From: Macrostomum lignano
Taxonomy: Eukaryota
Direction: 5' to 3'
Length of the DNA: 64,000 nt
Assembly (NCBI GenBank): GCA_002269645.1
Contig: NIVC01001520.1
Coordinates: 62,001 to 126,000, forward strand
The notes under the pieces were generated by a model. That model worked only from the letters and a program-made list of their open reading frames with translations, had not been told where the DNA came from and ran no database searches. This document shows positions 36,204 through 61,340 of the stretch, piece by piece (positions within the stretch are counted from its first letter, which is position 1; each line of letters starts with the position of its first letter). Both the position numbers and the translations under genes were made by a program.

Positions 36204-41070
<4,867 letters not shown>

Positions 41071-41766
41071 GACCCATCCGTTTTGGGCATCAATTTTTAA
41101 GAAATGCAGCCTACTCACGTGACTTAATTAACTGTCGTATTGATCGGTTTGAATCAATGGTTTTAAAAAGCCTGTTTGAAGTACAGTACAAGTAAAACAC
41201 TCTATCGGCTTCTGTGCCTGCTTAAATAGTTCCTTCTTATTTTCTAATTGTTGTTGTCGTCTTTCTCTGTGTTGTTTGTACATCTCAATCCTAATTTATT
41301 AGAGTACATGTCTGTGTGTAAAAAGTGAGGATAATATTTTTTTGTACAATTGCGCCCTGATTATTTACAAAAACTTGCGCTACTGTAAGTAGTTGATTAG
41401 ATGATATTTTGCACCGAAACTCACTGAATTTGACAGCCTAGCTATTAAAATTGGTTTTATTAAAAAAATAATTTTATCAATCCTGTCCAGTGCCACTTAT
41501 GTCCCGCCTCTTTTTACACGACTTTAATTCTGTAGCTTTCATATCAATTCATATATCAGAAACACAAGGACACAAATAAATAGCCTGCATACTTTTTTCT
41601 TCGGTTTGTTCTCTATAGACAGAGACATTTTTAACAACATTATATTACTATTTATTACTATTAATCGAACTTGTTGGTTCCAGTGATAGTTATTATTATT
41701 GTTTTCTTGTTTATAACACGAGGCGATGCACATTTATACACAGAGGCGAACAAACTAGAAGTGACA

Positions 41767-44700
41767 TTAGGTGGGCGTGGCCACCTTCTCAGCTACGAGA
41801 TCCAGCAGTTTAGCAGTGCGCAGTCGCCAGTTGCTGGGCACTTTGCTAACGAGCACCACAGCTCGCCGTGCCTGGGCTCGGCCGCTTCGCACAGGGCGGC
41901 CACGCGTCTCTGCTGGTCCTCGGTGCCGTGCTGCAGTTCAAATCGGCGCCAGTTGGCCCAGGCGTCGCCGAAGTCGCTGTCCAGCTTCACAGCCCGCTGG
42001 AACCAATCTCGGGCTTTGTTAATCTGCCGCTCGCACCAGAACAGCCGGCCAACCGCCAGCAGCACGTGCGGATCGTGCTCGCATTTCTTAGTAGCGTCGA
42101 CCGATTTCGCTCTCCGCTGCGGCCTGGCCTCCATGAAGATGGCTTCAGCCCATAGCTGGCCGGCTGTGGGGCACTGCTGCAGAGCGCGGGACATTGTGGC
42201 CGCGGCCATCTGTGGCTGTCCGGACTTCAGTTCGGTGCGGACGGCTTCCAGCCAGAGCTGCGGCACGCGGGGATTGTTGACTCGGGCCCGTTCCAGGATA
42301 CTGCGCGCTCGGGTCGCCTGGCCCTAGTTCGTGTGTTTTCAAGGAAGGGGTTGAAAGTTTTTTCAGAAGAAAAAAATACTCGCTGCGGCTTACTCTTAGT
42401 AGATTAAGAGAAATAACATTTAAGGGGGAGAAAAGAGGGTGGATAATTGACAAAGAATTATTTTGAATGTAAGGAACTGGATTCCCAGCTAACTGAAATC
42501 TCTAAGGAACTGGATTCACAGCTAACTGGAATCTCTAAGGAACTGGATTCCCAGCTAACTGGAATCTCTAAGGAACTGGATTCACAGCTAACTGGAATCT
42601 CTAAGGAACTGGATTCCCAGCTAACTGGAATCTCTAAGGAACTGGATTCACAGCTAACTGGAATCTCTAAGGAACTGGATTCCCAGCTAACTGGTATCTC
42701 TAAGGAACTGGATTTCCAGCTAACTGGAATCTCTAAGGAACTGGATTTCCAGCTAACTGGAATCTCTAAGGAACTGGATTCCCAGCTAACTGGAATCTCT
42801 AAGGAACTGGATTTCCAGCTAACTGGTATCTCTAAGGAACTGGATTCCCAGCTAACTGGAATCTCTAAGGAACTGGATTTCCAGCTAACTGGAATCTCTA
42901 AGGAACTGGATTCCCAGCTAACTGGAATCTCTAAGAAACTGGATTTCCAGCTAACTGGAATCTCTAAGGAACTGGATTCCCAGCTAACTGGAATCTCTAA
43001 GGAACTGGATTCACAGCTAACTGGAATCTCTAAGGAACTGGATTCACAGCTAACTGGTATCTCTAAGGAACTGGATTCCCAGCTAACTGGAATCTCTAAG
43101 GAACTGGATTCCCAGCTAACTGGAATCTCTAAGGAACTGGATTCCCAGCTAACTGGAATCTCTAAGGAACTGGATTCACAGCTAACTGGAATCTACATGT
43201 ACGAAGGCCGATTAACATTGAAATCGAACAGGATTTCTTAAACCTAACGATAATAAAATAAAGTCGGGAGCTCACCTGGCCCATCTCCAGCCTAGCCAGC
43301 AGCAGCCAGAGCGGCACTGACTGACGGCATCGCTGAATGCCTTCATTATAAGCGGCCCGAGCGGCCTCAACGTTGCCCTCCTGTTCGGCAATCTGTCCCA
43401 GCATCATCCACATCTTGTCAAATTGCGGATAAGCGCGCAGGCCTTCGTTTAGAAGCGCTTTAGCCTGCTCCAGTTCGCCCAGACACCACTCCAGCCTAGC
43501 CGATTTCATCCACACCCTAGCCGTTGAGGCTTGATTTCGCGCCCGCAGCAGCAGCTTGCGCGCTCGTTCAAAATCGTTATTCTCGCTCTCCAGCCGAACG
43601 GCGGCTAGCCAGATCTCCTCGGAATTTGGATTGGCTTTGAACGCGTTGGCTAGAATATAGCGAGCTCCGGGTATGTCGTCGGCTAGCCACTTGGACTTGG
43701 CGCCCATCAACCAGAGAGCTTCGGCGGTAGGGCATTTACTAACAGCATTGACTAGCAGCGATTCCAGAGCCTCTCTGGTGCCGTGGTTCTTTTCAAAATG
43801 AGCCGCCGCCAGCCAGACAGACTTCTTAGCCGGGAAAGCGGCAATGAGTTTGGCGTACACAGCCCTGGCGCATTCGAACGCCTCTCTGGCTGTGAAGCCT
43901 TCCGCATCCGTTAGCCACTGTCGCTTCCTATCAGGCTCGTCAATGCCGTGGCCAACCACAGTGCGAACAATGGCCCTGGCCGTTTCCATGGAGCCGCTAG
44001 ATTCGCACTCTTCCGCATCTTTTAGCCACAAGTCGCGATTGATTTCAACGCCGGCCACCTGCAGTGCGGCCACGGCGCGATCGATAATTTTGCCAACCAT
44101 TGGCAGATTCTTGTGAGCCTCTTCTAGCTTGGCAGCGGTGATCCAGATCAGCCTGTCAGTCGGCACATTGTCTCTGGCCTGGTTCAGCACGCTTCTAGCC
44201 GTCTCGTAGGTCTCGAGTTTGGCCAGGGCTAGCCAGAGGTCCACACTAGTTGGACAGCATTCAACTGCACGGCGTAGCATCACCCGGGCGTCCTCGGGCT
44301 CTTCGAGTTCAACGGCCAGCTTCCACAGTCGAACAGAGCTGGGCACCTGTTCGAGTGCTTTGCGGAATACTCGACGCTTGCGCTTGGGCTCGGATTCCAG
44401 CTCGGCGGCGCGGACCCACAGCCGGACAGACTGGGGCAAATGATTGATGCCCTGGGCCACCACCGCTCTGGCTTGGTCAGCCGGGATCAGGCGGGACGCT
44501 TCCATCCAGATGTCCTCGGATCTGGGCGGCGGGTAAGAGGGGGTGACTTGGAGTTTTTGTTAATTAATAAGCCGCCACAGCTAGCAAGCCTAATTAAATA
44601 GAGAATGATACTCTCTTTCTCTTAGAGAGGCACTTATTGGACAGTTTGCCACCCATTGGACAGTTTGTCACCCATTGCACATTTTGTCACCCATTGCACC

Positions 44701-46316
44701 AGTTTGTCACCCATTGCACATTTTGTCACCCATTGCACCAGTTTGTCACCCATATTGCACAGTTTGTCACACACTGCACGGTTTGGCACCCATTGGACAG
44801 TTTGGCACTCATTGGACAGTTTGGCACTCATTGGACAGTTTGGCACTTATTGGACAGTTTGCCACCCATTGGACAGTTTGTCACCCATTGCACATTTTGT
44901 CACCCATTGCACCAGTTTGTCACACACTGCACAGTTTGGCACCCATTGGACAGTTTGGCACTCATTGGACAGTTTGGCACTTATTGGACAGTTTGCCACC
45001 CATTGGACAGTTTGTCACCCATTGCACATTTTGTCACCCATTGCACCAGTTTGTCACACACTACACAGTTTGGCACCCATTGGACAGTTTGGCACTCATT
45101 GGACAGTTTGGCACTCATTGGACAGTTTGTCACTCATTGGACAGTTTGGAACCCATTGGACAGTTTGGCACTCATTGGACAGTTTGGCACTCATTTCACA
45201 GTTTGGCACTCATTGGACAGTTTGGCACTCATTGGACCAGTTTGGCACTCATCGGACTCACTTAGCGCCTATTTGGTGCAAAAGTCAGTAGTAATGTCTG
45301 TCTCCTTTTCAATCCCAATCTCACCTGGGACACTCCTCAGCGCCGCGCATAATCAGATTCCTAGCCTCCTGCATCTTTCCAGTGAGCTCCTCCAGCCTAG
45401 CTGAGGCAATCCAAGCAGGCGGATGCTTCAAATTGCTTTCTCGCACAGATTTCAACAGCAGGCGGGCCTTTTTAACATCGTTAATATCGGCGCCGTGCTG
45501 CGGTATAACGGAATTGAGATCGGTCAGGTAGCCCATAGGGTCAACCACAGTCTGGCCAGTGACAGAGTCGGCAGCCTGAGTCAGTTTAATATCCATTAGC
45601 GAAGTCCGGGCCTGACCAATCTTTTTCATATCGATATCGGCGCCGCCGGCGCTGCTGGTGCTGGCGCCGCCCCATGGTGTTGCTATGCCGCCTTGCAGCT
45701 GCTCGCGCAGGTCCACCTGGGCGGTGGTCTGGCCGGCGGACAGGCCCTTAGCCAGCAGGCTGTCCGGCGCCGGGGTGAACTTCTCAGCTCGGGGATTTCT
45801 CTGCCGTTTATTCCGAGCATCGCCAACCTCCGGCAGCGACAGCCACTCGTCCTCGGACACCAGCGCCAGGTCGCGCTTTAAATCGACAAACTGTTGCTGA
45901 ATTTTCGGTCGCTCCTTGCGAAATTTTTCCATCTCTTCGCGAAACCGGCGCTCCCGGTGCTCCCTGCGGCGCTCGTCCATTCGATCGTCTACGCTCGAGT
46001 AGATCCGGTCCGCTTCCTCGTCGTCCTTCTCATACGGATCCCTGGTGCACAGGGAGCCGCCGTAGCCGCTGAACTCGTCGTAGTTGGCGTCGTTAAGATT
46101 CTCGTCTTCGCCTTTCTCGTCGTCGTCGTGCGCCGGCTTTTTAGGCGGCGGCATGTGCCGCTCGTCAGGGGCGTCGTCGGCCTCGCGGGCCGGCCCAATG
46201 TCCGACCGGGTGGTGAAGCCGGTGGCGCCGCGGCCAACTCCGGGCACGTAGCCGGGCGGCGCCGGCATGCCGATGAATTCGCGCCGCTTGCGCGACACCA
46301 AAGACTGGGGAGCGGA
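41767..46316 (-). CDS. PRPF6: Pre-mRNA processing factor 6 (U5-102K, HAT repeats); no genomic ATG at the predicted start and an apparent 1-nt frameshift near the C-terminus
   Basis: Exons 45325-46316, 43276-44521, 41767-42323, phases 2,0. Motifs [49 protein letters not shown] and EPRHGELWC. About 930 aa once the frameshift at about 41853 is corrected. Confidence 0.95.
42470..43195. repeat. 33-bp minisatellite (AAGGAACTGGATTCCCAGCTAACTGGAATCTCT)n, PRPF6 intron 2
   Basis: Direct reading. The period is a multiple of 3, hence the spurious 264-aa ORF. Confidence 0.97.
44636..45250. repeat. ~19-bp minisatellite (CCCATTGGACAGTTTGGCA and variants), PRPF6 intron 1
   Basis: Direct reading, mixed variant units. 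Confidence 0.94.
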
Positions 46317-46331
46317 CTGGAAGAGTTGGGG
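46317..46331 (-). promoter_or_regulatory. 3' splice acceptor (CCCCAACTCTTCCAG) at the PRPF6 5' end; candidate trans-splice site
   Basis: Pyrimidine tract plus CAG directly before TCC GCT CCC CAG TCT TTG GTG TCG CGC AAG, in phase 0 with the PRPF6 frame. No in-frame ATG back to the TAA at 46395-46397. Confidence 0.6.
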
Positions 46332-46509
46332 TCGGTGCGGTCTGGGCTGCGACTTTTGCGCTCGGATAGGATGCTGGTATATGCATGAGCTTCTTTATCA
46401 GCTAACATGAACTTCTGCATCACCTAATATGAGATTCTGTATGGTTCTGCAAACTGTTTTATCTCAAGGACCAGATAAAGAATTCAGATCATGGCTGTGA
46501 GCCAGATAA

Positions 46510-46690
46510 GAAAGGAAAGGCGAGAGAAATAGAAGATTAGAGATAAGAGACAGAGGAGAAGAGAGGAGATGGGAGATAGAATTAGAGAAGAGATAAGAGA
46601 GGAGGTGAGAGAAGGGAGAGGAAAGAGGAGAGGAGAGGAGAGGAGAGAAGAGGGGCGAGAGGAGAGTGAAGAGATGAGAGGAAAGAAGGA
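46510..46690. repeat. Purine-rich (GA/GGAGA) low-complexity tract between INTS2 and PRPF6
   Basis: Direct reading. Confidence 0.85.
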
Positions 46691-47344
46691 TTGCTATTGT
46701 GAAGTTTCGAAGGATCCGATGGTCTTCTATGAGCTTCTAAGGATGAGCTTCTAAAAACAATAAAGTGCACCTCCTGCCAGCCAAGAGTGGCCGCAAAGGG
46801 CTCACTCGGGATGTACAGTGACTCGCTCATCATCATCAGGTATGTACACTCCGCTTTCTGGGCTCGTGCAGTTCCAATGTGTGCATAACCAAGCTTTGAA
46901 TTACAGAATAGAAACTAATAACACCGCATCTATGAATATAACACAATCTAAAACCCTAACTGCCAGTGTCCAGTGGTTTAAACAAACAAAAAATAACAGA
47001 AAAGTCGGCGATGCTGCTTACAGTAGCATGATTGCAGCTGAGTGTATTTTTCTTCCTAAAGAAAAAATAAGAAACGATTTAACCACAAACTTTAGTATAT
47101 GAAGTAGCGCTGAACAGGTAAGTAATTTGATGTACGACAGTATGTGTTAGTACGGGCGGGTAATTGGCGACATCATGCTGTACACATATCGAGGATTAAT
47201 TCGCCCATGGCAACAGGTAACTGTAGTATGTGTTCAATTGATAATTTTGGCTATAAAATGCATTGAAAACTTACACTCGTACTAACAAGAGCAGAATTGT
47301 CAGTAAAGTATAAGATAAAGTAAACAGGGAGGGTAGGAGCAGTC

Positions 47345-47870
47345 TACTGAGGATCAGACAGAGGGCAGCAGCGGTCTACTGAGGATCAGGCAGAGGGCAG
47401 CAGCGGTCTACTGAGGATCAGACAGAGGGCAGCAGCGGTCTACTGAAGGATCAGAGGGTAGCAGCGATCTACTGAAGGGTCAGAGGGTAGCAGCGATCTA
47501 CTGAAGGGTCAGAGGGCAGCAGCGGTTTACTGAAGGATCAGAGGGCAGCAGCGGTCTACTGAAGGATCAGAGGGCAGCAGCGGTCTACTGAAGGATCAGA
47601 GGGCAGCAGCGGTCTACTGAAGGGTCAGAGGGCAGCAGCGGTTTACTGAAGGATCAGAGGGCAGCAGCGGTCTACTGAAGGATCAGAGGGCAGCAGCGGT
47701 CTACTGAAGGGTCAGAGGGCAGCAGCGGTCTACTGAAGAATCAGAGGGCAGCAGCGGTCTACTGAAGAATCAGAGGGCAGCAGCGATCAACTGAAGGATC
47801 AGAGGGCAGCAGCGGTCTACTGAAGAATCAGAGGGCAGCAGCGATCAACTGAAGGATCAGATGGCAGCAG
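47345..47870. repeat. 29-bp minisatellite (TCAGAGGGCAGCAGCGGTCTACTGAAGGA)n just downstream of the INTS2 stop
   Basis: Direct reading. Starts about 70 nt after the INTS2 stop, so it may lie in the 3' UTR. Confidence 0.95.
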
Positions 47871-47939
47871 CGGGCTACTGGAGAAACAGGGGGTGTGGCC
47901 TGTGCACGCCTGCCGTACTTCAGTCCCCGCAGATCAGTG

Positions 47940-50900
47940 TCACTCCGGTGAAAAGTACAGAGTCCTGGGCACCAGGGTTCGCCGTACAATAGCATCCAGG
48001 GTAGACTCGGCCAGAACATAGCACAGCTGATACCGCTGGGGCAGGGTCAGGCTCTGTAGATCGCGACGATAGCGAGCCACGGTTTCCGGGGGCAGTCGAA
48101 ATTCTACGGGCACCGGCGATTTCAGCGTTGCCAAGGTGACGCGACACTGGTACATTAGGCCGAGCAAGTATTGAGAAGCTGGCCTAGCCAGTTTGGGGAA
48201 CGCTTTGCACATGTTGAGCACCGCTGCCATGCATTGAATGGCAAAATCAGCCTTTTCATCCAACGAGTGAACCTGGGAATTGGCGATTGCAAAAGTATTG
48301 GTTGTGATATCGTGACACGATGAACTTTGCAATAGGTTGCATGCACTGAAGTGTTGACTCACAAGCAGTGGAGATTGTTATTGACCGGCTTAGAGATTTG
48401 TTTGGTTTTGTATTCAACCCCCACCCCATGCGCGCGATTGAATCTGTCTGCACCCACCACCTCATTACTAATCAAAATAAATATTGTCAGCCTAGCTCTC
48501 AAGCGAGCACTTTTTACTCCTGCAATTCCACACTTCTGCCTCGGTTAACAAAGTTATCACATTGGTGTAAAGAAGAAATTCTGTGGGCAGCTCATAGCTG
48601 GGGTGTGGCTGGTTTGGGTGGCCAGATCATGGAAGAGTAATAGCTGGTTTGGGTGGCCAGATCATGGAAGGGTCATAGCTGGTTTGAGTGGCCAGATCAT
48701 GGAAGAGTAATAGCTGGTTTGGGTGGCCAGATCATGGAAGAGTAATAGCTGGTTTGGGTGGCCAGATCATGGAAGGGTCATAGCTGGTTTGAGTGGCCAG
48801 ATCATGGAAGAGTAATAGCTGGTTTGAGTGGCCAGATCATGGAAGAGTCATAGCTGGTTTGGGTGGCCAGATCATGGAAGAGTAATAGCTGGTTTGGGTG
48901 GCCAGATCATGGAAGGGTCATAGCTGGTTTGAGTGGCCAGATCATGGAAGAGTAATAGCTGGTTTGGGTGGCCAGATCATGGAAGAGTAATAGCTGGTTT
49001 GGGTGGCCAGATCATGGAAGAATCATAGCTGGTTTGGGTGGCCAGATCATGGAAGAGTCATAGCTGGTTTGGGTGGCCAGATCAGGAAGGGTCATAGCTG
49101 GTTTGGGTGGCCAGATCATGGAAGAATCATAGCTGGTTTGGGTGGCCAGATCATGAAAGGGTCATAGCTGGTTTGGGTGGCCAGATCATGGAAGGGTCAT
49201 AGCTGGTTTGGGTGGCCAGATCATGAAAGGGTCATAGCTGGTTTGGGTGGCCAGATCATGGAAGAATCATAGCTGGTTTGAGTGGCCAGATCATGGAAGG
49301 GTCATAGCTGGTTTGGGTGGCCAGATCATGAAAGGGTCATAGCTGGTTTGGGTGGCCAGATCATGAAGGGTCATAGCTGGTTTGGGTGGCCAGATCAGGA
49401 AGGGTCATAGCTGGTTTGGGTGGCCAGATCATGGAAGAATCATAGCTGGTTTGGGTGGCCAGATCATGAAAGGGTCATAGCTGGTTTGGGTGGCCAGATC
49501 ATGGAAGGGTCATAGCTGGTTTGGGTGGCCAGATCATGAAAGGGTCATAGCTGGTTTGGGTGGCCAGATCATGGAAGAATCATAGCTGGTTTGAGTGGCC
49601 AGATCATGGAAGGGTCATAGCTGGTTTGGGTGGCCAGATCATGAAAGGGTCATAGCTGGTTTGGGTGGCCAGATCATGAAGGGTCATAGCTGGTTTGGGT
49701 GGCCAGATTATGAAGCAATTCATCTGTATTTACCTGATTAGACAGCACAGTAAGGCTCTCTAGTACGGTAGCCGCCTTATCCAGCGCAGCCTGAATTCTG
49801 TACTGGCCAGCCAGAAATCCCATTAGATTGATATTGAAAATCCTAGCAGCCGGATCGGCATTAAAAGCCAAATGGTCCAGTATGAAATCCAGGCAAATAT
49901 GCATGGATGGTATGGCGCAGGCGGTGAATGGAACCAGCCGGAGCGGATAGCACTGCCAGTGAACCACCTGGCACAGGGCTCGCTCCCGATCCGATATGAA
50001 CAACGAATGAACAAAGGTGGCCAGAATACGACGAACGTGTCTGGGCGAGTCCAGGCATCGCTCCAGCAGTAGCTGAACTGTGCAAGCGGCCTGAGTAGCT
50101 AGCAGGCTCCGACGGAGCGGCTGACAAGGCGAGCCTTTGTCCGGGTGCTGCTGCTGCAGCTGCTGTTGCTGAAGCATCTGCTGCTGGTGAAGCTGCTCCA
50201 CCTGATGCCGGCCATCTAGACAGGCCAGAGCAATCTGCCGCTCCCAGTAGGACTCGGAGGCGCGCAGTGATAGTTCAATGATTCGAAGGCAGAGCTCTAG
50301 CAGGGCCGGCTGGCGATAGGCGCAGTCTGGCAGTGCGGCGACAACCTGCGGGCCAGAGGCGTCTCAAAGTCACTTGCGTAGCCCCAGAGTCGGTGCATGT
50401 AACACAGATAAAATAGGAAAGAAAAGACTTTGGACGATTCTAAAACGACAAGGTGTCACGGAAAAAGCCGCCAAAAAGTCGGCAAAGAGTCGCTTAAGAG
50501 TCAATCTGAGGCGGTTTATTGTCTGCGACTCTGAAACGACTCTGGGTGCTGTAGAGTCGTATCGGAAACGGTTTATTGTCTGCGACTCTGAAATGACTCT
50601 GGCGCTTTAGATTTGTATCTGAGGCGGTTTATTGTCTGCGACTCTGAAACGACTCTGGCGCTGTAGAGACGTATCTGATGCGGTTTTATTGGAAAGCTAA
50701 GCGCTAACACAACGACTTTTGGGTGACTTTTTCGCTACTATTTTGCGATTCTACAACTCACGTGAATTTCATTTCAGTTGTTTGAGTCGTTAAAATTCGC
50801 AGAGTTGCCCCAAGAGTCACTAGTGAGGTATTTGCAATGACTCTTTAGCGATTTTGGTCACGTTAAAGTTTTCAACGGGATAGACAATAAAGCCAATCAA

Positions 50901-53900
50901 GCTGACGTTCTGTAAGCCTTAGATGACTGATGACGCATCGGGGGCTGAGACCTCAGCCGTAAACACGTTTGATCATTGGTTCGATTCCGTGCGCGGCCAC
51001 ATTCATTTGGGGCCCGTGTGCACGAAAATTAGCCTGGGGTTGTTCGTGCGATTCACAGCCATGATGGCCAACCCCCAAGGCACAGAGTGTGTACATTGCC
51101 TTGCGATTAGAAAGTCATGAGTGCGTGCCTGAGTACAGTATTGGCGCGCTTGCATGTGCTCAGGAGTCAGCGGAATGGGCAGAATTGCCTCAGCGCTGGT
51201 TGTATGACGATGTCGCCGAAATGGTTGCGCCAGGATTCCTCTAATCCACCTGAGAATATTTATTCATTTTTATACACATGTGACTGACTCAGCAACCTTT
51301 CAGTCCTACCTGTTCAACAGGATCTTTCTCGATGGTCTCCTCGCTGAGGGACACGCCACGCAGGGCTGACAGCGTAGCCAAAGCCAGCCGACGCGGCATC
51401 AGCTGGTAGAGCCGCAGCCACAGCGGTTTTAGCCGCTCCTGCACCAGCTGACTAGCCGGCCCGTCCAATCCGGTTGAAGCCTTAAGCAGCCGGACCAGCC
51501 AATCAGCGTAGGGTATCAGACAGTCGGCCTTGCGATTGGCTAGCCAGTTTAGCCGGGTCATAATCCCGGCCAGGGCGTGTCCACCGGAGGCCAGCTCGGC
51601 GGCGCTGCAGCCGACAAAATCTGTTGGACGAGGCGGCGGCGAGCCAGGCGGCGGCAGCAGCTGGACTGGGCGAAGGTCGTCCGGGCAGCTGTCCTGAGAC
51701 AGGGCCAGCTCGTCCTGCGGGCAGTGAATAGATATTCTATATCAATATATTGTGCTTAGACTGCAATACCAATATCAGTATAGTACCGAATGACCGGAAG
51801 GGGCAGTCACCGAATGACCGGATGGGGGCAGTCACCGAATGACAAGATGGGGGCAGTCACCGAATGACCGGATGGGGGCAGTCACCGAATGACCGGATGG
51901 GGGCAGTCACCGTATGACTGAAAGGGGTCAGTCACCGAATGACCGGAAGGGGGCAGTCACCGAATGACTGAAAGGGGGCAGTCACCGAATGACCGGATGG
52001 GGGCAGTCACCGAATGACCGGATGGGGGCAGTCACCGAATGACCGGATGGGGGCAGTCACCGAATGACCGGATGGGGGCAGTCACTGAATGACAAGATGG
52101 GGGCAGTCACCGAATGACAAGATGGGGGCAGTCACCGAATGACAAGATGGGGGCAGTCACCGAATGACCGGATGGGGGCAGTCACCGAATGACCGGAAGG
52201 GGGCAGTCACCGAATGACCGGATGGGGGCAGTCACCGAATGACCGGATGGGGGCAGTCACCGAATGACCGGATGGGGGCAGTCACCGAATGACCGGATGG
52301 GGGCAGTCACCGAATGACCGGATGGGGGCAGTCACCGAATGACCGGATGGGGGCAGTCACCGAATGACCGGATGGGGGCAGTCACCGAATGACCGGATGG
52401 GGGCAGTCACCGAATGACCGGATGGGGGCAGTCACCGAATGACCGGATGGGGGCAGTCACCGAATGACGGGAAGGGGTAACGGTGCTACCAAAGGACTAG
52501 GGGTATATTCAGTATTACTCAGCGCATTACCTGAATAGGCAGTTCAGTTAGCAGCAGATGCGGCATACGCAGAACAAGCAGCCGCACCAGCAGCGGATAG
52601 AGCACCCTATAGTGTTCGGGCCTTCGCTGGCAATGCCTGACCAGATAACCGACAGGAATTCGCGACAGCAGATTGCTATCGTAGCGATGCACAGATCGGC
52701 CTGACCGAGAGATCTCTAGCCTAGAATCGAACAGGCAATCAACGTAGCACAGTACATAGTACAGCATCAATAGTTGCGGAGTTAAATCTCGTTCAATAGT
52801 AGACATTTCGAGCTCGTTCTCGCCTTCGTTGTCAAAGCAACGAAGGGGCGCGCAGGCGGCTGCCGGACCGCAGGCGGAGGGCGTGTAGAATGCTAGAATA
52901 TCGGTCTGCCTGATGACCTCGTAGGCTGGGGCGCTCCATTTGTCGTGCGGTTGTACGAGAGATTTGGCGAACGCCTCGATTAGGATTGGCATGACCGTGT
53001 TGAGCGGAGCGCGGCACTCTTTGATCTGGCGCAGCACCCAGCCAGTGACGTCAGCCTAGGAATGCAACGAAGCGAAGTCTTTGAAGTCGATAAATAAGCA
53101 CTCCAAAATCTCACCAAACTAAGCACTCAATCGATATCTCACCAAACTAAGCACTCAATCGATATCTCACCAAACTAAGCACTCAATCGATATCTCACCA
53201 AACTAAGCTCTCAATCGATATCTCACCAAAATAAGCACTCTCAATACAGATCCCACCAAACTAAGCACTCTCAATCGAAATCTCAACAAACTAAGCACTC
53301 TCAATCGAAATCTCACCAAACTAAGGTCGCCATTAAAAATCTCACACATCAGATTTTATTCCCTAGTTTAAAAGGCCTATAAGTTTAATACCATGAACAC
53401 AGAGCAAAAATTTACCTTATACTTAGCAAACGAACGCATCTGCAGCAGCTGTAGCACGCAATGCGCAGGCAGATGACCTTCAGTTGTTGACGTCAGGCCG
53501 GGCGTCACTTCAACTCGAACAGCGTGCGCTGCGGCGGCCGGCTCGGGCAGCAGGTCAGTAAGGAACACTTTCACGAGAGACGGCGCCAGCTGTACAAGAT
53601 GATGCTGCTGCTGCTGTTGAAGCTGTTGATGAGTAGAGGGCAGATGCGGCTGCTGCTGCTGTGCGGCTCGTTTGGCAGCCTGACGAAGGCCCAGTAGGCC
53701 GTCTAGAAATTCGCAGGCCTGGCCCTGCTGTCTGGAGTGCAGATGGCTGGCGCAGAGGAGCAGCACCTCCTGTTTGGTTTATAACAAATAGGTAGCCGAT
53801 TAACTTCAATGACACATTCATTTGGGGCTCTTGGCCCCTCGTTTCTTAGTAAAACATTTTGGGGGGGGGTTGGGCTTGAGCTAATATGCATTATAAAAGT

Positions 53901-56900
53901 ATATCAATATCCTATTTCTTGTCTTTTTTACAAATAAAGAAATCAATGGAGCATTTCTTTACTAAACATAACAATTAGAAAAAAAAACAATCGCTTTTTT
54001 GTCTTTTGAAACTCTCAATAGCAATCGGGCCCGGTCAAGGTTTGTGTCTTATCTCAGGTCTTATCTCTATTCTTTCCTCTCTTCCCTGTCCTTTTTCTCT
54101 CCTCTTCTCTTCTCTCCCCCCTATTATTTCCTCTTTCACTTCTTCCCTCCTCATCTGCGTTACTTTGAGCACTCTTTCCTCTCCCCCTTTTTCTTCCCTC
54201 TTCCTCTTTTATCTCCTCTCTTCTCTGTTATTTCTGCTCTATCCTCTCCCCCCCTCTTCTCACATCCCATCTTTCATCTCATCCCTCCTTAAATCTCCTC
54301 TATCGCCTCTTTTCTCTTCAGGCAGTTCGACGGGCCGAAAAATGCTTGATTTTCTTCCTACTGTTTGAATGGTCCTATAGTTCTGTAAGAAAACTTCATG
54401 CACTTCATGCAGTCACGTGACTAACAAGAATGAATGGCACAGTTCGATTATTTAAGCCAATAAGCTACAACAGACCTTGTACCGACAGTCGGGCCGGCCG
54501 GGCTCCCGAACCAGCCGGCGTAGCCAGGCCAACAGTCTGGCCTGTTGGGTATCGTTAAACGCTGTATAAGCTATCAGAGCAAAGGCTACGCACACAGCCG
54601 TTAATCCGCCAGTTGCATCCGGCCCAGCCGATGTCAACAGTTCGGCGAGGGCGGCCAGCTCCGATTCGGTCAAAGCCGGTTGAGTTGGCGCGTGGCAGTG
54701 CAGTACAGCGTAAAGCTTCACTAGCTGACTGGCTAGGATGACAGCCGCAGGCGAGGAGGCGATAGCACTAGCCGATGCAACCGAGCGCAACTCGGCCAGT
54801 AGATCTGGTCGACAAGCGGCTAGGAATGCCGGACCAGGCGATGTTGGAGACTGTTGCCGTTGCTGCTGCTGCTGTCGTCCGCCAGACGCGGCGGCTGTGA
54901 CGGCCGCTAGAAACCAGGCCCGCGTGTCTGGCGACTCGTGCATCAATAAGCGACGCAGAGCGGCTGGCCTAGCGGCTGGCGGAGTAGCCCGGGTCAGCAG
55001 GCCGGCCAGCAGGTCCGGATAGCGCCGCTCTGAGGCGCACATCTCGGCTAGCCAAGCGGACTGGCCGGGATCCAACTCGGCCAGGCTGAGGGCCCAACGG
55101 ATTGGCCGGCCGGGACCGCAGGCCAGCAGCTGACGGACGAGGCTGCGCCAGGCGGCCGGCTGCAGAGCGGCCAAGTGTTGAAGTAGGCGACGGCCTCGGC
55201 GCAAGCGTAGAAGGCCGGGCAGAAGGCGGCGGGGCGGCAGGAGGTCCGGCAGGCGATGATTGACAGCGACTAGGGTGGCCAGGCAGTGGTGGAACAGCAG
55301 CTCGGAGTCGGCCAGCTCGGTGGCCGCCGGGCTGTCATTGCTGTCTGAGCTGTTGTCGTCGGCTGGCGACGTAGCAACGGCGACGGCAGAGTTGAAGGCG
55401 TCGAAGCCGCGAGCTTCCGCGGTGCGAACGGCCACTAGGATGTCTCTGTAGTGTTTTTGAAGGAATTGAATTTGGAAGCTGAACTGAAAAACTGAGTACA
55501 TTTAGTGTGTGCCCATTTTCCTAAGAAAATTATAAAATTAGGGCCGATTTTGGCATGATTAAAACGATAAACAATGAAGATTAGCAAGGATAACCAAGGC
55601 TGATTAGCAAGGATAATCAATGGAGATTGGCAAGGATAATCAATGGAGATTGGCAAGGATAATCAATGGAGATTGGCAAGGATAATCAATGGAGATTGGC
55701 AAGGATAATCAATGATGATTGGCAAGGATAATCAAGGCCGATTGGCAAGGATAATCCATGATGATTGGCAAGGATAATCAAGACCGATTGGCAAGGATAA
55801 TCAAGGATGATTGGCAAGGATAATCAAGGCCGATTGGCAAGGATAATCAATGATGATTGGGAAGGATAATCAATGACGATTGGCAAGGATAATCAATGAT
55901 GATTGGGAAGGATAATCAATGACGATTGGCAAGGATAATCAATGACGATTGGCAAGGATAATCAATGACGATTGGCAAGGATAATCAATGATGATTGGGA
56001 AGGATAATCAAGGATGATTGGCAAGGATAATCAATGGAGATTGGCAAGGATAATCAATGACGATTGGGAAGGATAATCAAGGATGATTCGGAAGGATAAT
56101 CAAGGATGATTGGCAAGGATAATCAAGGATGATTCGGAAGGATAATCAATAATGATTGGCAAGGATAATCAAGGATGATTGGCAAGGATAATCAAGGATG
56201 ATTCGGAAGGATAATCAAGGATGATTGGCAAGGATAATCAAGGATGATTGGGAAGGATAATCAAGGATGATTGGCAAGGATAATCAAGGATGATTGGGAA
56301 GGATAATCAAGGATGATTGGCAAGGATAATCAAGGATGATTGGCAAGGATAATCAAGGATGATTGGGAAGGATAATCAAGGATGATTGGGAAGGATAATC
56401 AAGGATGATTGGCAAGGATAATCAAGGATGATTGGGAAGGATAATCAAGGATGATTGGGAAGGATAATCAAGGATGATTAAGAAGGATAATCAAGGATGA
56501 TTGGCAAGGATAATCAAGGATGATTGGCAAGGATAATCAAGGATGATTGGCAAGGATAATCAATGATGATTGGGAAGGATAATCAATGACGATTGGCAAG
56601 GATAATCAATGACGATTGGCAAGGATAATCAAGGATGATTGGGAAGGATAATCAAGGATGATTGGCAAGGATAATCAATGGAGATTGGCAAGGATAATCA
56701 ATGACGATTGGGAAGGATAATCAAGGATGATTCGGAAGGATAATCAAGGATGATTGGCAAGGATAATCAATGGAGATTGGCAAGGATAATCAAGGATGAT
56801 TCGGAAGGATAATCAATAATGATTGGCAAGGATAATCAAGGATGATTGGCAAGGATAATCAAGGATGATTCGGAAGGATAATCAAGGATGATTGGCAAGG

Positions 56901-58616
56901 ATAATCAAGGATGATTGGGAAGGATAATCAAGGATGATTGGCAAGGATAATCAAGGATGATTGGCAAGGATAATCAAGGATGATTGGCAAAGATAATCAA
57001 GGATGATTGGCAAGGATAATCAAGGATGATTGGCAAAGATAATCAAGGATGATTGGGAAGGATAATCAAGGATGATTGGCAAGGATAATCAAGGATGATT
57101 GGCAAGGATAATCAAGGATGATTGGGAAGGATAATCAAGGATGATTGGCAAGGATAATCAAGGATGATTGGCAAGGATAATCAAGGATGATTGGGAAGGA
57201 TAATCAAGGATGATTGGGAAGGATAATCAAGGATGATTGGGAAGGATAATCAAGGATGATTGGGAAGGATAATCAATGATGATTGGGAAGGATAATCAAG
57301 GATGATTGGGAAGGATAATCAAGGATGATTGGGAAGGATAATCAAGGATGATTGGCAAGGATAATCAAGGATGATTGGCAAGGATAATCAAGGATGATTG
57401 GCAAGGATAATCAAGGATGATTGGGAAGGATAATCAAGGATGATTGGCAAGGATAATCAAGGATGATTGGGAAGGATAATCAAGGATGATTGGAAGGATA
57501 ATCAAGGATGATTGGGAAGGATAATCAAGGATGATTGGCAAGGATAATCAAGGATGATTGGCAAGGATAATCAATGATGATTGGCAAGGATAATCAAGGA
57601 TGATTGGGAAGGATAATCAAGGATGATTGGGAAGGATAATCAAGGATGATTGGCAAGGATAATCAAGGATGATTGGCAAGGATAATCAAGGATGATTGGC
57701 AAGGATAATCAAGGATGATTGGGAAGGATAATCAAGGATGATTGGGAAGGATAATCAAGGATGATTGGGAAGGATAATTAATGATGATTGGGAAGGATAA
57801 TCAAGGATGATTGGGAAGGATAATCAAGGATGATTGGGAAGGATAATCAAGGATGATTGGCAAGGATAATCAAGGATGATTGGCAAGGATAATCAATGGA
57901 GATTGGCAAGGATAATCAATGGCGATTAGCAAGGATAATCAAAGACGATTGACAAGGATAATTAATGGAGATTGGCAAGGATAACCAATGGCAAGGATAG
58001 TAAGGGTTGATTATTCAAATATAATCGAGACAACTTCGAAAAAAGAATATTTTAATAGTTTTGAAGAATAAAAAACACTAACAAAAATTGTCAAAAATAT
58101 CAATGAGCATGTAAAATAACAACGCGAATCGCCTCACCGAAGCAACATCCTGGCCTGCTGGTCCGGCCGGTCGCAGGATTCGAACTCGCCACTGGACGCG
58201 GCTGACGGCCAGACCACGGAGACGAAATCGCCAATCAGGCCGCACTTATCGACAACCCGCCGCTCCAGGTCCACCTTAGCGTCGTGCCCGATGGCATCAA
58301 ATTCTACGCTATAATGCAAGGAATTGGCATAGTCAAGCACGTGACCGAAATGTAAGCTATTCGCTTCCGGTTGGCAGGCTGCCAATAGTTCGGCCAGATC
58401 TAGCCGGTCCCGATGCCAGGATAGCAGCGGCGCCAAGGCCAGCAGCTCAGATTCGGACCAACTCGCAACTAGACGGCCGCACCGAACAGCTCGATAGAGT
58501 TTGGCAAAGTTGCAGTCTTCGTCGCCGCCGCTAGCCGAATTGAAATTGCTATTGTAATAACTGCCAGCACTGTGCGGTTGCCGGTTCGCTTCGCAACCAT
58601 TCGAAGATGGCTGCAT
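47940..58616 (-). CDS. INTS2: Integrator complex subunit 2
   Basis: Exons 58138-58616, 54476-55445, 53416-53769, 52531-53055, 51310-51714, 49734-50345, 47940-48272, phases 2,0,0,0,0,0, totalling 1225 aa. Recognisable blocks LTPQLLMLYYVL, LWLRLYQLMPRRL, HLPAHCVLQLL and IPSMHICLDFI. Confidence 0.9.
48595..49710. repeat. 35-bp minisatellite (ATAGCTGGTTTGGGTGGCCAGATCATGGAAGGGTC)n, INTS2 intron 6
   Basis: Direct reading. Confidence 0.97.
50505..50690. repeat. ~56-bp tandem repeat, 3-4 copies, INTS2 intron 5
   Basis: CGGTTTATTGTCTGCGACTCTGAAA at 50512, 50569 and 50625, partial at 50681. Confidence 0.88.
51787..52470. repeat. 25-bp minisatellite (GGGGGCAGTCACCGAATGACCGGAT)n, INTS2 intron 4
   Basis: Direct reading. 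Confidence 0.97.
53105..53325. repeat. 29-31-bp minisatellite (TCTCACCAAACTAAGCACTCAATCGATA-like), INTS2 intron 3
   Basis: About 7 copies. Confidence 0.92.
54060..54320. repeat. CT-rich low-complexity tract, INTS2 intron 2
   Basis: Direct reading. Confidence 0.8.
55585..57990. repeat. 23-bp minisatellite (CAAGGATAATCAAGGATGATTGG)n, about 2.4 kb, INTS2 intron 1
   Basis: Direct reading. The unit is itself a near-dimer of CAAGGATRAT. Confidence 0.97.
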
Positions 58617-58717
58617 AATAATTGCCCGCTGTAACAAAAGAAAAGAGCCGAATGCCTTTTTTACATTCTGTAGATGGTTTTACATCAGAGTGCACTTCCC
58701 TTATCAAACAGTTGGAA

Positions 58718-58895
58718 ATACCTATTCGGATAAATGGGGAACTCCCCTGTCATCAAAGATAACAGCTACCTATTCGGATAAATGGGGAATTCCCCTGTCA
58801 TCAAAGATAACAGCTACCTATTCGGATAAATGAGGAATTCCCCTATCATCAAAGATAACAGCTACCTATTCGGATAAATGGGGGATTCCCCTATC
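58718..58895. repeat. 48-bp tandem repeat, 3-4 copies, in the NAA50-INTS2 spacer
   Basis: TACCTATTCGGATAAATGGGGAATTCCCCTGTCATCAAAGATAACAGC repeated. Each unit contains a GGGGAATTCCCC palindrome or a variant of it. Confidence 0.9.
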
Positions 58896-59169
58896 ATTCT
58901 AAATACCCTCTAAAGAATCGAGAACCCCCAGAAGGAAGCAAATATCAAGTCAAAATGTAACCAAAACTCGTACTATAATAAAAGCCTATGTATTATAAAG
59001 GCTTAAGTATTATTAATTAGGTTAATATATTGTACTTAAAGGACCATTCAAAATAACTGGATGACAAAGGTTTATAAAAAGCAGATTAAGCGCAGTTACA
59101 ATATAAATAGTCTAATTTAATAGTAGTCCATATATAATTAACTAACAGAGACGTAAATCAACGAAGGCT

Positions 59170-61340
59170 TCAACTGCGCAATAGATTCTTCTGCAGCACG
59201 TAGGCGTCCGGTGGCACAATTCGCTTATAATAGTTATACGCCGTATCGACAATTTCAAAGCCGAATTTCTTATAGAACGCCAGAGCGCCTTCGTTGCTAG
59301 TCTGCACGTGCAAAAATATATTGTCAATATTTTTATCTCGCGAACATATTTCGAACACGTATTCTAATAATTTAGTGCCGACGCCCAGCTCCCGGTAGGG
59401 CGCCAGGCAGCCCAGCGTCATGATGTACAGCCGGCGCTGCCCAGCCTCCGATTGGATGCGGCAGCAGACTGCGCCGACAACGATATCGTTGAAGTAGGCC
59501 AGTCGGCCCAGTTCGCCGTTCTCCAAAATGTCGTCGTAGAACTTGTCGGTGTAGGAAACTGGGAACACAACCTGGGTTTGAGTGTTGGAATTTGCTCAAG
59601 TTTCTCATTACCATGGTAACAAGATTCTGCTGATAATTAGCTAAAGCACTCGGAAATATTGATTATCCAGGCACTCGGCAATATTAATGATTATCCATGC
59701 ACTCAGCAATTTTAATGATTATCCAGGCACTCGGCAATATTAATGATTATCCAGGCACTCGGCAATTTTAATGATTATCCATGCACTTGGCAATTTTAAT
59801 GATTATCTAGGCACTCAGCAATTTTAATGATTATCCAGGCACTCGGCAATATAATTGATTATCCATGCACTCGGCAATTTTAATGATTATCCATGCACTC
59901 GGCAATTTTAATGATTATCCAGGCACTTGGCAATTTTAATGATTATCTAGGCACTCAGCAATTTTAATGATTATCTAGGCACTTGGCAATTTTAATGATT
60001 ATCCAGGCACTCGGCAATTTTAATGATTATCCAGGCACTCGGCAATTTTAATGATTATTTAGGAACTCGGCAATTTTAATGATTATTCAGGCACTCGGCA
60101 ATATTAATGATTATCCAGGCACTCGGCAATTTTAATGATTATCCAGGCACTCGGCAATTTTAATGATTATCCAGGAACTCGGCAATCTTAATGATTATCC
60201 AGGCACTCGGCAATCTTAATGATTATCCAGGCACTTGGCAATCTTAATGATTATCCAGGCACTCGGCAATCTTAATGATTATTTAGGAACTCGGCAATTT
60301 TAATGATTATCTAGGCACTTGGCAATCTTAATGATTATCCAGGCACTTGGCAATCTTAATGATTATCCAGGCACTCAGCAATCTTAATGATTATTTAGGA
60401 ACTTGGCAATTTTAATGATTATCTAGGCACTCAGCAATTTTAATGATTATCCAGGCACTCGGCAATATTAATGATTATCCAGGAACTCGGCAATCTTAAT
60501 GATTATCCAGGCACTCGGCAATCTTAATGATTATCCAGGCACTCGGCAATATTAATGATTATCCAGGCACTCGGCAATCTTAATGATTATCCAGGAACTC
60601 GGCAATCTTAATGATTATCCAGGCACTCGGCAATCTTAATGATTATCCAGGCACTTGGCAATCTTAATGATTATCCAGGCACTCGGCAATCTTAATGATT
60701 ATTTAGGAACTCGGCAATTTTAATGATTATCTAGGCACTTGGCAATCTTAATGATTATCCAGGCACTTGGCAATCTTAATGATTATCCAGGCACTCGGCA
60801 ATCTTAATGATTATTTAGGAACTCGGCAATTTTAATGATTATCTAGGCACTCAGCAATTTTAATGATTATCCAGGCACTCGGCAATCTTAATGATTATCC
60901 AGGCACTCGGCAATCTTAATGATTATCCAGGCACTCGGCAATTTTAATGATTATCCAGGCACTCAGCAATCTTAATGATTATCCAGGCACTCGGCAATCT
61001 TAATGATTATCCAGGCACTCGGCAATTTTAATGATTATCCAGGCACTCAGCAATCTTAATGATTATTTGGGCACTCGGCAATTTTAATGATTTTATCCGA
61101 GCACTTGACAATCTGATTATTCAGGCGCTCTTAAATCTGAATGATTATCCAAGCACTCGGTAGCATTCAAAGCATTTAACCTACCTGGTTGATAATTCTC
61201 AACTGCCTAATATTGTGCTGAGTGATGTCACCCAGTTCGATGCGACTGTCACTAGGCAGCTTGGATTGTTTGCAAGAATTGACATTAGCAGTGTTTTGTT
61301 CAATAGAAACTGCTTCATCAGAGTGAACTACTGATACCAT
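59170..61340 (-). CDS. NAA50: N-alpha-acetyltransferase 50 (NatE catalytic subunit, GNAT)
   Basis: Exons 61185-61340 (MVSVVHS...SRIELGDITQHNIRQLRIINQ) and 59170-59571 (VVFPVSYTDKFY, AYFNDIVVGAVCCR, LYIMTLGCLAPYR, LHVQTSN, NYYKRI), joined in phase 0. Confidence 0.95.
59660..61160. repeat. 28-bp minisatellite (TGATTATCCAGGCACTCGGCAATTTTAA)n, NAA50 intron
   Basis: Direct reading. Higher-order block duplication between about 60175 and 60595. Confidence 0.97.

What the first reader, a model, noticed from the sequence alone, without database searches (positions are those of the whole stretch)
41767..61340. Candidate three-gene operon NAA50 - INTS2 - PRPF6
Seen: three conserved housekeeping genes lie head-to-tail on the minus strand. 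The NAA50 stop is only about 540 nt from a strong acceptor (CTTTTCTTTTGTTACAG, 58629) placed 12 nt before the INTS2 ATG, so an SL AUG would again be in frame (MRAIIMQP). INTS2 to PRPF6 is about 1.6 kb, of which roughly 0.7 kb is repeat, and PRPF6 also begins at an acceptor. Established: trans-splicing animals resolve polycistronic transcripts this way. Inference: one upstream promoter drives an operon coupling an snRNA 3'-processing subunit with a U5 snRNP factor.
Basis: partly seen in the sequence, partly recalled or inferred. Interest (0 to 1): 0.7.

Follow-up and report, generated by a model that had tools for sequence, protein, structure and literature searches.

The report
Likely flatworm operon: NAA50, INTS2, PRPF6
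Three housekeeping genes lie head-to-tail in a stretch of Macrostomum lignano (flatworm) DNA and fit that species' published definition of a trans-splicing operon, a common and already described arrangement there, but co-transcription is not shown.

Summary
The window is Macrostomum lignano: a UniProt INTS2 fragment of that species is 290/291 identical.

In this species one spliced leader (SL) ending in ATG is added to about 30% of genes. About 15% of genes are already classed as operon members.

Both downstream genes start at acceptors matching the published trans-splice motif [T/C]TNCAG, and both are in frame with the SL AUG. PRPF6 has no genomic start codon ahead of its conserved N-terminus, so the SL most likely supplies it. 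A UniProt INTS2 model starts at the first base after the INTS2 acceptor, and another fuses NAA50 to INTS2 through that acceptor.

After removing tandem repeats the spacers are at most 322 and 893 nt, under the published 1 kb cut-off. Only NAA50 has a long AT-rich, TATA-bearing upstream region.

Co-transcription and single-promoter control are not shown; no reads could be reached. The INTS2-PRPF6 link is the weaker one, and in the cestode Rodentolepis nana INTS2 is not the gene upstream of PRPF6.

Verdict: a plausible new member of a known kind, of low interest. I put the full three-gene operon at about 0.45.

The parts
61341..64000 (-). AT-rich upstream region of NAA50 and candidate shared promoter. 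It has GC 0.26, no minisatellite and no YTNCAG acceptor in the first 1,060 nt. A TATAAAA box sits at 61386-61380, 46 nt before the ATG.
61185..61340 (-). NAA50 exon 1. It has its own ATG at 61340 and the donor CAG|gtaggt. The first 30 residues are not conserved with human NAA50.
59572..61184 (-). NAA50 intron (1,613 nt), 89% of it a 28-bp minisatellite (59660-61092).
59170..59571 (-). NAA50 exon 2, with stop TGA at 59172-59170.
58629..59169 (-). Spacer 1 (541 nt, GC 0.35). It has ATTAAA at 59121-59116 and no AATAAA. A GTTAGT donor at 59146 is the one used by the chimeric UniProt model. It holds 219 nt of tandem repeat, mostly a 48-bp repeat x3.7 (58719-58897) with a GGGGAATTCCCC-like core. It has no GT[AG]AG donor. 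It ends in the acceptor ttacag (58634-58629).
58138..58628 (-). INTS2 exon 1. Its first base, 58628, is the putative SL trans-splice junction, and its own ATG is at 58616. The SL AUG would be in frame (MRAIIMQP).
47940..55445 (-). INTS2 exons 2-7: 55445-54476, 53769-53416, 53055-52531, 51714-51310, 50345-49734 and 48272-47940 (stop TGA 47942-47940). The whole protein is 1,225 aa. Each intron is mostly its own private minisatellite.
46317..47939 (-). Spacer 2 (1,623 nt, GC 0.48). It holds 730 nt of tandem repeat, mainly a 29-bp minisatellite (47359-47880) and a CT-rich repeat (46539-46690). It has no AATAAA or ATTAAA and no TATA box. It has three GT[AG]AG donors, but none closes an ATG-bearing in-phase exon. 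It ends in the acceptor ttccag (46322-46317).
45325..46316 (-). PRPF6 exon 1. Its first base, 46316, is the putative SL junction; an alternative in-frame acceptor gives a start at 46304. There is no genomic ATG before the conserved [16 protein letters not shown], so the start codon is inferred to come from the SL.
41767..44521 (-). PRPF6 exons 2 (44521-43276) and 3 (42317-41767). The introns carry a 19-bp and a 33-bp minisatellite. A 1-nt frameshift at about 41851-41852 makes the as-is frame stop at 41795-41793, whereas the conserved frame stops at TAA 41769-41767.
41651..41656 (-). First canonical AATAAA after PRPF6, about 110 nt past the stop. It is the likely 3' end of the cluster. The next gene, OSTalpha/TMEM184-like on the plus strand, ends at 39926 and is convergent with PRPF6.

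Best explanation
This is a Macrostomum lignano gene cluster of the species' known SL trans-splicing operon type.

Inferred mechanism: RNA polymerase II starts in the AT-rich, TATA-bearing region upstream of NAA50 and transcribes NAA50, INTS2 and PRPF6 as one precursor. NAA50 keeps its own capped 5' end and its own ATG. The precursor is cut into mRNAs by 3' end formation of the upstream gene. The 35-nt spliced leader, which ends in AUG, is then added at ttacag|C (58629|58628) for INTS2 and at ttccag|T (46317|46316) for PRPF6.

For PRPF6 the SL supplies the initiator methionine ([17 protein letters not shown]...). For INTS2 the SL AUG is in frame, 4 codons ahead of the gene's own ATG.

Shown here: gene identities, order and strand; acceptor positions, motif and frame; the absence of a PRPF6 genomic start codon; spacer lengths and repeat content. 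Inferred: actual SL addition, a single promoter and a polycistronic precursor.

My sub-estimates are: INTS2 trans-spliced 0.8; PRPF6 trans-spliced 0.85; NAA50-INTS2 co-transcribed 0.65-0.7; INTS2-PRPF6 co-transcribed 0.45-0.5.
For: Species: UniProt A0A1I8JCD1 of M. lignano is 290/291 identical to INTS2 exons 4-5 of the window.

Literature: the M. lignano SL ends in ATG. About 30% of genes are trans-spliced and 15% (10,458) are in operons, and 18% of operons start with a non-trans-spliced gene. The trans-splice acceptor motif is [T/C]TNCAG. The operon rule is a repeat-subtracted same-strand distance under 1 kb, with a mode near 100 bp (PMC8629364). About 7% of assembled transcripts are multi-gene precursors (PMC5730564).

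Window: both candidate acceptors match the motif, against 1 of 9 internal acceptors, and both are in frame with the SL AUG. The PRPF6 frame is open and conserved upstream of the first internal Met, with no ATG back to the preceding stop. No in-phase ATG-bearing upstream exon with a usable donor exists in spacer 2.

UniProt models: A0A1I8HA52 begins, without Met, exactly at 58628. A0A1I8FDS6 joins the NAA50 3' UTR (donor at 59146) to that same acceptor.

Spacers: the non-repeat parts are 322 nt and 893 nt measured from the stop codons, so true intergenic distances are shorter. Spacer 1 has no GT[AG]AG donor and spacer 2 has no TATA box.

Composition: the only AT-rich block of 800 nt or more (GC at most 0.31) near the cluster lies upstream of NAA50. 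The longest other such blocks in the window lie upstream of the CSD and OSTalpha genes.
Against: No RNA evidence could be reached, so SL junctions, poly(A) sites and read-through are unobserved.

Spacer 2 is long (1,623 nt; 893 nt non-repeat), near the valley of the published distance distribution and far from its roughly 100 bp mode. It has room for a promoter.

About 60% of trans-spliced M. lignano genes are not in operons.

Spacer 1 carries a four-copy repeat with kappaB-like palindromes and GATA motifs. These could be transcription-factor sites of an internal promoter.

The two UniProt models come from an error-prone early assembly and may be ab initio predictions rather than transcript-based.

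No INTS2-PRPF6 chimeric model exists. The INTS2-PRPF6 linkage is absent in Rodentolepis nana.
Confidence: 0.45

Rival explanations
1. There are two transcription units. NAA50 and INTS2 form a two-gene operon. PRPF6 is transcribed from its own promoter inside the 1.6 kb spacer, and its outron is removed by SL trans-splicing, which still supplies the AUG.
For: Spacer 2 is three times longer than spacer 1. Its 893 nt of non-repeat sequence lies close to the 1 kb cut-off, not near the 100 bp mode. Most trans-spliced genes in this species are monocistronic. A chimeric UniProt model exists for NAA50-INTS2 but none for INTS2-PRPF6.
Against: Spacer 2 has no TATA box and no AT-rich promoter-like block. 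It has no canonical AATAAA or ATTAAA, so the INTS2 3' UTR may run through much of it and leave a short true intergenic gap. By the published rule the pair would still be classed as an operon.
Confidence: 0.25
2. There are three independent genes that merely lie in the same orientation. INTS2 and PRPF6 each have a promoter in the spacer upstream and are monocistronic SL-trans-spliced genes.
For: Same-strand triplets arise by chance one time in four. About 60% of trans-spliced genes are outside operons. The 48-bp repeat in spacer 1 carries GGGGAATTCCCC-like palindromes and GATA motifs 90-270 nt upstream of the INTS2 acceptor, which could be a small promoter. Gene order is not conserved in the cestode checked.
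Against: Spacer 1 leaves about 250 nt or less of non-repeat sequence between the likely NAA50 poly(A) site and the INTS2 acceptor. A UniProt model joins NAA50 and INTS2 in one transcript-like structure. Only NAA50 has the long AT-rich upstream block.
Confidence: 0.2
3. There is no trans-splicing at these sites. The acceptors at 58629 and 46317 are ordinary cis-acceptors fed by unrecognised upstream 5' exons. One candidate is the GTTAGT donor in the NAA50 3' UTR, which would give a read-through NAA50-INTS2 mRNA.
For: The chimeric model A0A1I8FDS6 uses a cis intron, 59146 to 58629. Flatworm acceptors are often shared between cis- and trans-splicing (PMC12582326). Spacer 2 contains three GT[AG]AG donors.
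Against: No ATG-bearing open exon in spacer 2 ends in phase at a usable donor, so PRPF6 would still lack a start codon. Both sites match the trans-splice motif. A0A1I8HA52 starts exactly at the INTS2 acceptor with nothing upstream.
Confidence: 0.07

Closest known systems
Macrostomum lignano SL trans-splicing operons (Ustyantsev and Berezikov 2021, PMC8629364) and the 'transcriptional units' of Wudarski et al. 2017 (PMC5730564)
   Same: Same species. Same-strand neighbours. Downstream genes start at [T/C]TNCAG acceptors. Repeat-rich spacers fall under 1 kb after repeat subtraction. The first gene apparently is not trans-spliced, as in 18% of published operons. The genes are conserved housekeeping genes, the class enriched among trans-spliced genes. 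Three-gene operons make up 18% of the published set.
   Different: SL reads and poly(A) reads for this locus were not available here, so membership rests on sequence features. Spacer 2 lies at the long end of the accepted range. I found no published mention of this particular trio.
Caenorhabditis elegans SL2-type operons
   Same: A polycistronic precursor is resolved by coupling 3' end formation with SL addition. Operons hold two to eight genes, mostly housekeeping.
   Different: The C. elegans intercistronic distance is about 100 nt, and a specialised SL2 marks downstream genes. Here the spacers are 541 and 1,623 nt and repeat-laden, and M. lignano has a single SL.
Polycistrons of parasitic flatworms, for example the cytochrome b-c1 subunit 7 / enolase pair (Calvelo et al. 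2025, PMC12582326)
   Same: The SL has a 3' AUG. Operon candidates are defined by strand, distance (200-1,000 bp) and an SL acceptor on the second gene. Chimeric gene models are taken as a sign of polycistronic precursors.
   Different: This gene trio does not appear in that paper's held supplementary files. In Rodentolepis nana the gene upstream of PRPF6 is a gamma-tubulin complex protein, not INTS2.
Flatworm SL 3'-terminal AUG used as initiator methionine (Cheng et al. 2006, cited in PMC12582326)
   Same: PRPF6 exon 1 has no genomic ATG before its conserved N-terminus. The SL AUG falls in frame directly before it, giving [17 protein letters not shown], close to MSVQTLVTKKRKEFIG of Schistosoma.
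   Different: This is not shown at the RNA or protein level here. For INTS2 the SL AUG is in frame but not needed, because the gene has its own ATG 12 nt downstream.

Membership tests
M. lignano SL operon (operational definition of PMC8629364) | Immediately adjacent genes in the same orientation, not interrupted by an opposite-strand gene | tested here: met
   NAA50, INTS2 and PRPF6 are all on the minus strand. No conserved ORF, tRNA or Rfam RNA lies in the spacers.
M. lignano SL operon (operational definition of PMC8629364) | The downstream gene is SL trans-spliced, shown by SL-containing reads at its 5' acceptor | tested here: inconclusive
   No reads were available. Indirect evidence: both acceptors match the YTNCAG motif and are in frame with the SL AUG; PRPF6 lacks a genomic ATG; UniProt model A0A1I8HA52 starts at 58628.
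M. lignano SL operon (operational definition of PMC8629364) | Intergenic distance under 1 kb after subtracting repeats | tested here: met
   The distances are at most 322 nt (spacer 1) and at most 893 nt (spacer 2), measured from stop codon to acceptor after removing TRF arrays. 3' UTRs would shorten both further.
M. lignano SL operon (operational definition of PMC8629364) | One promoter and a polycistronic precursor RNA | not testable with these tools
   Only soft hints exist: a single AT-rich, TATA-bearing block upstream of NAA50 and a chimeric NAA50-INTS2 UniProt model.
C. elegans-type SL2 operon | Intercistronic region of about 100 nt | tested here: not met
   The stop-to-acceptor distances are 541 and 1,623 nt.
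C. elegans-type SL2 operon | A specialised second SL used for downstream genes | not testable with these tools
   The literature reports a single SL in M. lignano. No SL RNA gene lies in the window.
SL 3'-AUG as initiator methionine (flatworms) | The SL ends in AUG | tested here: met
   The published M. lignano SL is CGGTCTCTTACTGCGAAGACTCAATTTATTGCATG.
SL 3'-AUG as initiator methionine (flatworms) | The acceptor is in frame with the ORF and no genomic in-frame ATG lies upstream of the conserved N-terminus | tested here: met
   For PRPF6 the frame is open with no ATG from 46394 to the first internal Met, and [16 protein letters not shown] aligns with homologue N-termini. For INTS2 the acceptor is in frame but the gene has its own ATG.
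SL 3'-AUG as initiator methionine (flatworms) | An mRNA or N-terminal peptide showing use of the SL AUG | not testable with these tools
   No transcript or proteome data could be reached.
NAA50 (NatE catalytic subunit) | GNAT fold with full-length similarity to NAA50 rather than to other NATs | tested here: met
   Pfam Acetyltransf_1 matches at 3e-17. Human NAA50 matches at E 2.7e-72 over residues 5-156, while the next NAT families score 1e-11 or worse.
INTS2 (Integrator subunit 2) | Match to PF14750 and to human INTS2 along its length | tested here: met
   Three exons hit PF14750 (E 2e-14, 2e-33, 5e-33) and 7cun_B matches at E 4e-56. Exon 1 alone gives no Pfam hit, but it is contiguous with INTS2 in UniProt model A0A1I8HA52.
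PRPF6 / Prp1 | PRP1_N domain followed by HAT/TPR repeats, with similarity to PRPF6 end to end | tested here: met
   PF06424 matches at 2.3e-54 over its full length. TPR/HAT families are present. The C-terminus aligns to human PRPF6 residues 760-937 at E 8e-94.

The most novel reading that the evidence does not exclude
The cluster could be a self-referential trans-splicing module. An Integrator subunit acts in 3' processing of Sm-class snRNAs (and, from my recollection of nematode work, possibly of the SL RNA itself). A tri-snRNP protein is needed for every splicing event. Both would be made from SL-trans-spliced mRNAs of one operon. PRPF6 would depend entirely on the SL for its start codon, so SL supply and spliceosome capacity would feed back on each other.
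Probability: 0.1. Interest if true: 0.45.

Novelty: new member of a known kind. Interest (0 to 1): 0.2.

Why it matters
The finding has modest importance. Operons resolved by SL trans-splicing are already catalogued genome-wide in M. lignano, so this adds at most one more example, possibly one already present in the public genome browser.

It has three practical uses:
- M. lignano can be made transgenic, so this is a clean locus for testing whether repeat-filled spacers of 0.5-1.6 kb really lack promoters.
- PRPF6 is a clear case where an essential gene has no genomic start codon, which explains why genome-only annotation misses or truncates it.
- The chimeric and mis-named UniProt entries at this locus show how operons corrupt automated gene models.

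Tried and rejected
1. I looked for close relatives and their contigs to test synteny. The INTS2, PRPF6 and NAA50 searches returned only M. lignano UniProt entries without contigs. Look-ups of P0001, P0123, P0125 and a window ORF found nothing on record. A spliced NAA50 protein was not accepted for look-up, and I did not try it by another route.

2. Synteny in other flatworms gave a negative result. Upstream of Rodentolepis nana PRPF6 lies a gamma-tubulin complex gene. Nothing lies within 10 kb in Schistosoma margrebowiei.

3. The supplementary files held for four papers (three M. lignano papers and one on parasitic flatworms) contain no row for PRPF6, INTS2 or NAA50. A fifth paper has no held supplementary files. 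Wasik et al. 2015 is not held.

4. There is no SL RNA gene in the window, no Rfam family or tRNA, and no dispersed repeat shared between the spacers and the rest of the window.

5. I rejected a cis-spliced ATG-bearing first exon for PRPF6 inside spacer 2. None is in phase with a usable donor.

6. I rejected an SL acceptor in front of NAA50. There is no YTNCAG within 1 kb upstream, and the only in-frame AG inside exon 1 is a poor AAG.

7. The alternative INTS2 exon 2 acceptor at 55478 was dropped in favour of 55445, which the UniProt model uses.

8. The Y-box (CSD) gene at 21.2 kb begins at an acceptor that is out of frame with an SL AUG, so that exon is internal and is not a second example.


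Full report
**What is there**

The minus strand between 61340 and 41767 carries three conserved genes in a row.

- NAA50 has two exons, 61340-61185 and 59571-59170. Pfam finds a GNAT domain. The spliced protein matches human NAA50 at E 2.7e-72 over residues 5-156, across the exon junction.
- INTS2 has seven exons and encodes 1,225 aa: 58616-58138, 55445-54476, 53769-53416, 53055-52531, 51714-51310, 50345-49734 and 48272-47940. Three exons hit Pfam PF14750. The model matches human INTS2 (7cun_B) at E 4e-56, out to chain residue 1140 of 1204.
- PRPF6 has three exons: 46316-45325, 44521-43276 and 42317-41767. It has a full PRP1_N domain (E 2e-54) plus HAT/TPR repeats, and its C-terminus aligns to human PRPF6 residues 760-937.

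Donors are GT[AG]AG-like and acceptors are mostly CAG. The spacers contain no other conserved ORF, tRNA or Rfam RNA. The NAA50 stop lies 541 nt from the acceptor at 58629. The INTS2 ATG follows 12 nt later. The INTS2 stop lies 1,623 nt from the acceptor at 46317, and 730 nt of that spacer is tandem repeat.

**Which organism**

The only close INTS2 relative among 5.8 billion protein clusters is UniProt A0A1I8JCD1 of Macrostomum lignano. It is identical at 290 of 291 aligned residues. Three more M. lignano entries match at about 99%. The window is therefore M. lignano, a free-living flatworm.

- A single 35-nt SL, CGGTCTCTTACTGCGAAGACTCAATTTATTGCATG, is added to about 30% of genes.
- The top enriched motif at trans-splice acceptors is [T/C]TNCAG.
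- 10,458 genes (15%) are assigned to operons, 18% of which begin with a non-trans-spliced gene.
- The operon rule is same-strand neighbours, a trans-spliced downstream gene, and an intergenic distance under 1 kb after subtracting repeats. The mode is about 100 bp (PMC8629364).
- About 7% of assembled transcripts are precursors with several trans-splice sites (PMC5730564).
- All reported flatworm SLs end in ATG, which can act as a start codon (PMC12582326, citing Cheng et al. 2006).

**Evidence that the two downstream genes are trans-spliced**

Both candidate acceptors, ttacag|C at 58629|58628 and ttccag|T at 46317|46316, match the published motif. Only 1 of the 9 internal acceptors of these genes does. 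Joined to the SL, both read in frame: MRAIIMQPSS... for INTS2 and [24 protein letters not shown]... for PRPF6.

The PRPF6 case is the strongest.
- The reading frame is open from 46394, but it contains no ATG before the Met of GMPAPP.
- The codons upstream of that Met are conserved. [16 protein letters not shown] aligns in register with MSVQTLVTKKRKEFIG of Schistosoma, MISKKRREFIG of Rodentolepis and MSSLISKKKKAFLG.
- Within the 1.6 kb spacer, no ATG-bearing open exon ends in phase at a usable donor.
- The start codon therefore most likely comes from the SL. Initiation at a near-cognate codon cannot be excluded.

For INTS2 there is indirect database support. UniProt model A0A1I8HA52 begins, without a methionine, with RAIIMQPS, which maps to 58628, the first base after the AG. 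Model A0A1I8FDS6 is a NAA50-INTS2 chimera. It runs from NAA50 exon 2 past the stop codon to a GTTAGT donor at 59146, then joins the same acceptor. Calvelo et al. treat such chimeras as signs of polycistronic precursors. However, these models come from an early, indel-prone assembly and could be ab initio predictions, so I count them as supportive, not decisive.

**Evidence on co-transcription**

By the published rule both pairs qualify. The non-repeat part of spacer 1 is 322 nt and that of spacer 2 is 893 nt. Both are measured from stop codons, so the true transcript-to-transcript gaps are shorter.

Spacer 1 has ATTAAA 49 nt after the NAA50 stop and no GT[AG]AG donor. Spacer 2 has no AATAAA or ATTAAA and no TATA box, so the INTS2 3' UTR may extend through the 29-bp minisatellite and well into the spacer.

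Upstream of NAA50 lie 2.66 kb of GC 0.26 sequence without minisatellites. This stretch has no YTNCAG acceptor in its first kilobase, and it has a TATAAAA box 46 nt before the ATG. Long AT-rich blocks of this kind occur in the window mainly upstream of gene starts, at 17.3-19.2 kb before the CSD gene, 33.8-36.2 kb before the OSTalpha-like gene and 61.2-64 kb before NAA50. None precedes INTS2 or PRPF6. Downstream, PRPF6 is followed by AATAAA and then by a convergent gene. The cluster therefore looks like one unit with one promoter-like flank. This is a soft, within-window argument.

**Evidence against**

- No reads, caps or poly(A) sites could be examined.
- Spacer 2 is long and lies near the valley of the published distance distribution.
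- Most trans-spliced genes in this species are monocistronic.
- Spacer 1 holds four copies of a 48-bp unit with GGGGAATTCCCC-like palindromes and GATA motifs that could be transcription-factor sites.
- No INTS2-PRPF6 chimeric model exists.
- The linkage is not ancient. In Rodentolepis nana the gene upstream of PRPF6 encodes a gamma-tubulin complex protein. In Schistosoma margrebowiei nothing lies within 10 kb.
- The suggested functional coupling of Integrator with the U5 snRNP factor is thus unsupported. Animal operons generally group housekeeping genes without tight functional logic (established knowledge).

**Verdict**

My estimates are:
- INTS2 trans-spliced: 0.8
- PRPF6 trans-spliced, with an SL-donated AUG: 0.85 for trans-splicing
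- NAA50-INTS2 co-transcribed: 0.65-0.7
- All three genes in one operon: about 0.45
- NAA50-INTS2 operon plus an independent PRPF6: 0.25
- Three independent genes: 0.2
- No trans-splicing at all: 0.07

In novelty it is a new member of a known kind, and it may already be present in the public Mlig_3_7 annotation, which I could not query. Interest is low (0.2). The most appealing detail is that an essential spliceosome protein appears to need trans-splicing to obtain its own start codon.

Noticed in passing
window 41840-41860 (minus strand): PRPF6 has an apparent 1-nt deletion at about 41851-41852. The as-is frame ends ...[25 protein letters not shown] at 41793. The shifted frame reads [27 protein letters not shown] and aligns with human PRPF6 to residue 937 of 941. 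This is either an assembly error or a damaged copy in this polyploid genome.
   Followed up: yes
window 42318-61184, all introns of the three genes: Most introns are largely filled by their own private minisatellite, with units of 19-35 bp and 7-105 copies. In 7 of 9 introns this covers 61-90% of the length. The 2.66 kb upstream of NAA50 has essentially none. The literature says tandem and simple repeats make up 15% of the genome, but I found no description of this one-array-per-intron pattern.
   Followed up: partly
window 58719-58897 (minus strand): A 48-bp repeat (3.7 copies) in the NAA50-INTS2 spacer carries a GGGGAATTCCCC-type palindrome (kappaB-like) and two GATA motifs per unit, 90-270 nt upstream of the INTS2 acceptor. 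It could be a transcription-factor site array or just another minisatellite.
   Followed up: no
UniProt entries matching window 47940-59571: The M. lignano UniProt models at this locus are fragmentary or mis-named. A0A1I8HA52 ('RAP domain-containing') and A0A1I8I9R0 ('Ras-GAP domain-containing') are INTS2 pieces. A0A1I8FDS6 ('NatE') is a frame-wandering NAA50-INTS2 chimera. A0A1I8JCD1 skips 28 conserved residues of exon 4. No model covering the PRPF6 N-terminus was found.
   Followed up: partly
window 61250-61340 (minus strand): NAA50 has a 30-residue N-terminal extension (MVSVVHSDEAVSIEQNTANVNSCKQSKLPS) with no counterpart in human NAA50, encoded by AT-rich sequence. The true start could lie elsewhere, but no good acceptor or other in-frame ATG was found.
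   Followed up: partly
window 3287-5688 (+), 21222-21593 (+), 36156-39926 (+): Other genes in the window are an EXS/XPR1-like gene, a cold-shock-domain (Y-box) gene with a Gly-rich tail, and an OSTalpha/TMEM184-like gene that is convergent with PRPF6. All have minisatellite-filled introns. Two larger ORFs at 10353-10907 and 13082-13744 (+) have no Pfam match.
   Followed up: partly
window 59141-59146 (minus strand): A GTTAGT donor 23 nt after the NAA50 stop codon could splice to the INTS2 acceptor, removing a 518-nt intron. That would give a mature bicistronic NAA50-INTS2 mRNA as a minor isoform. It is known only from a UniProt gene model.
   Followed up: partly
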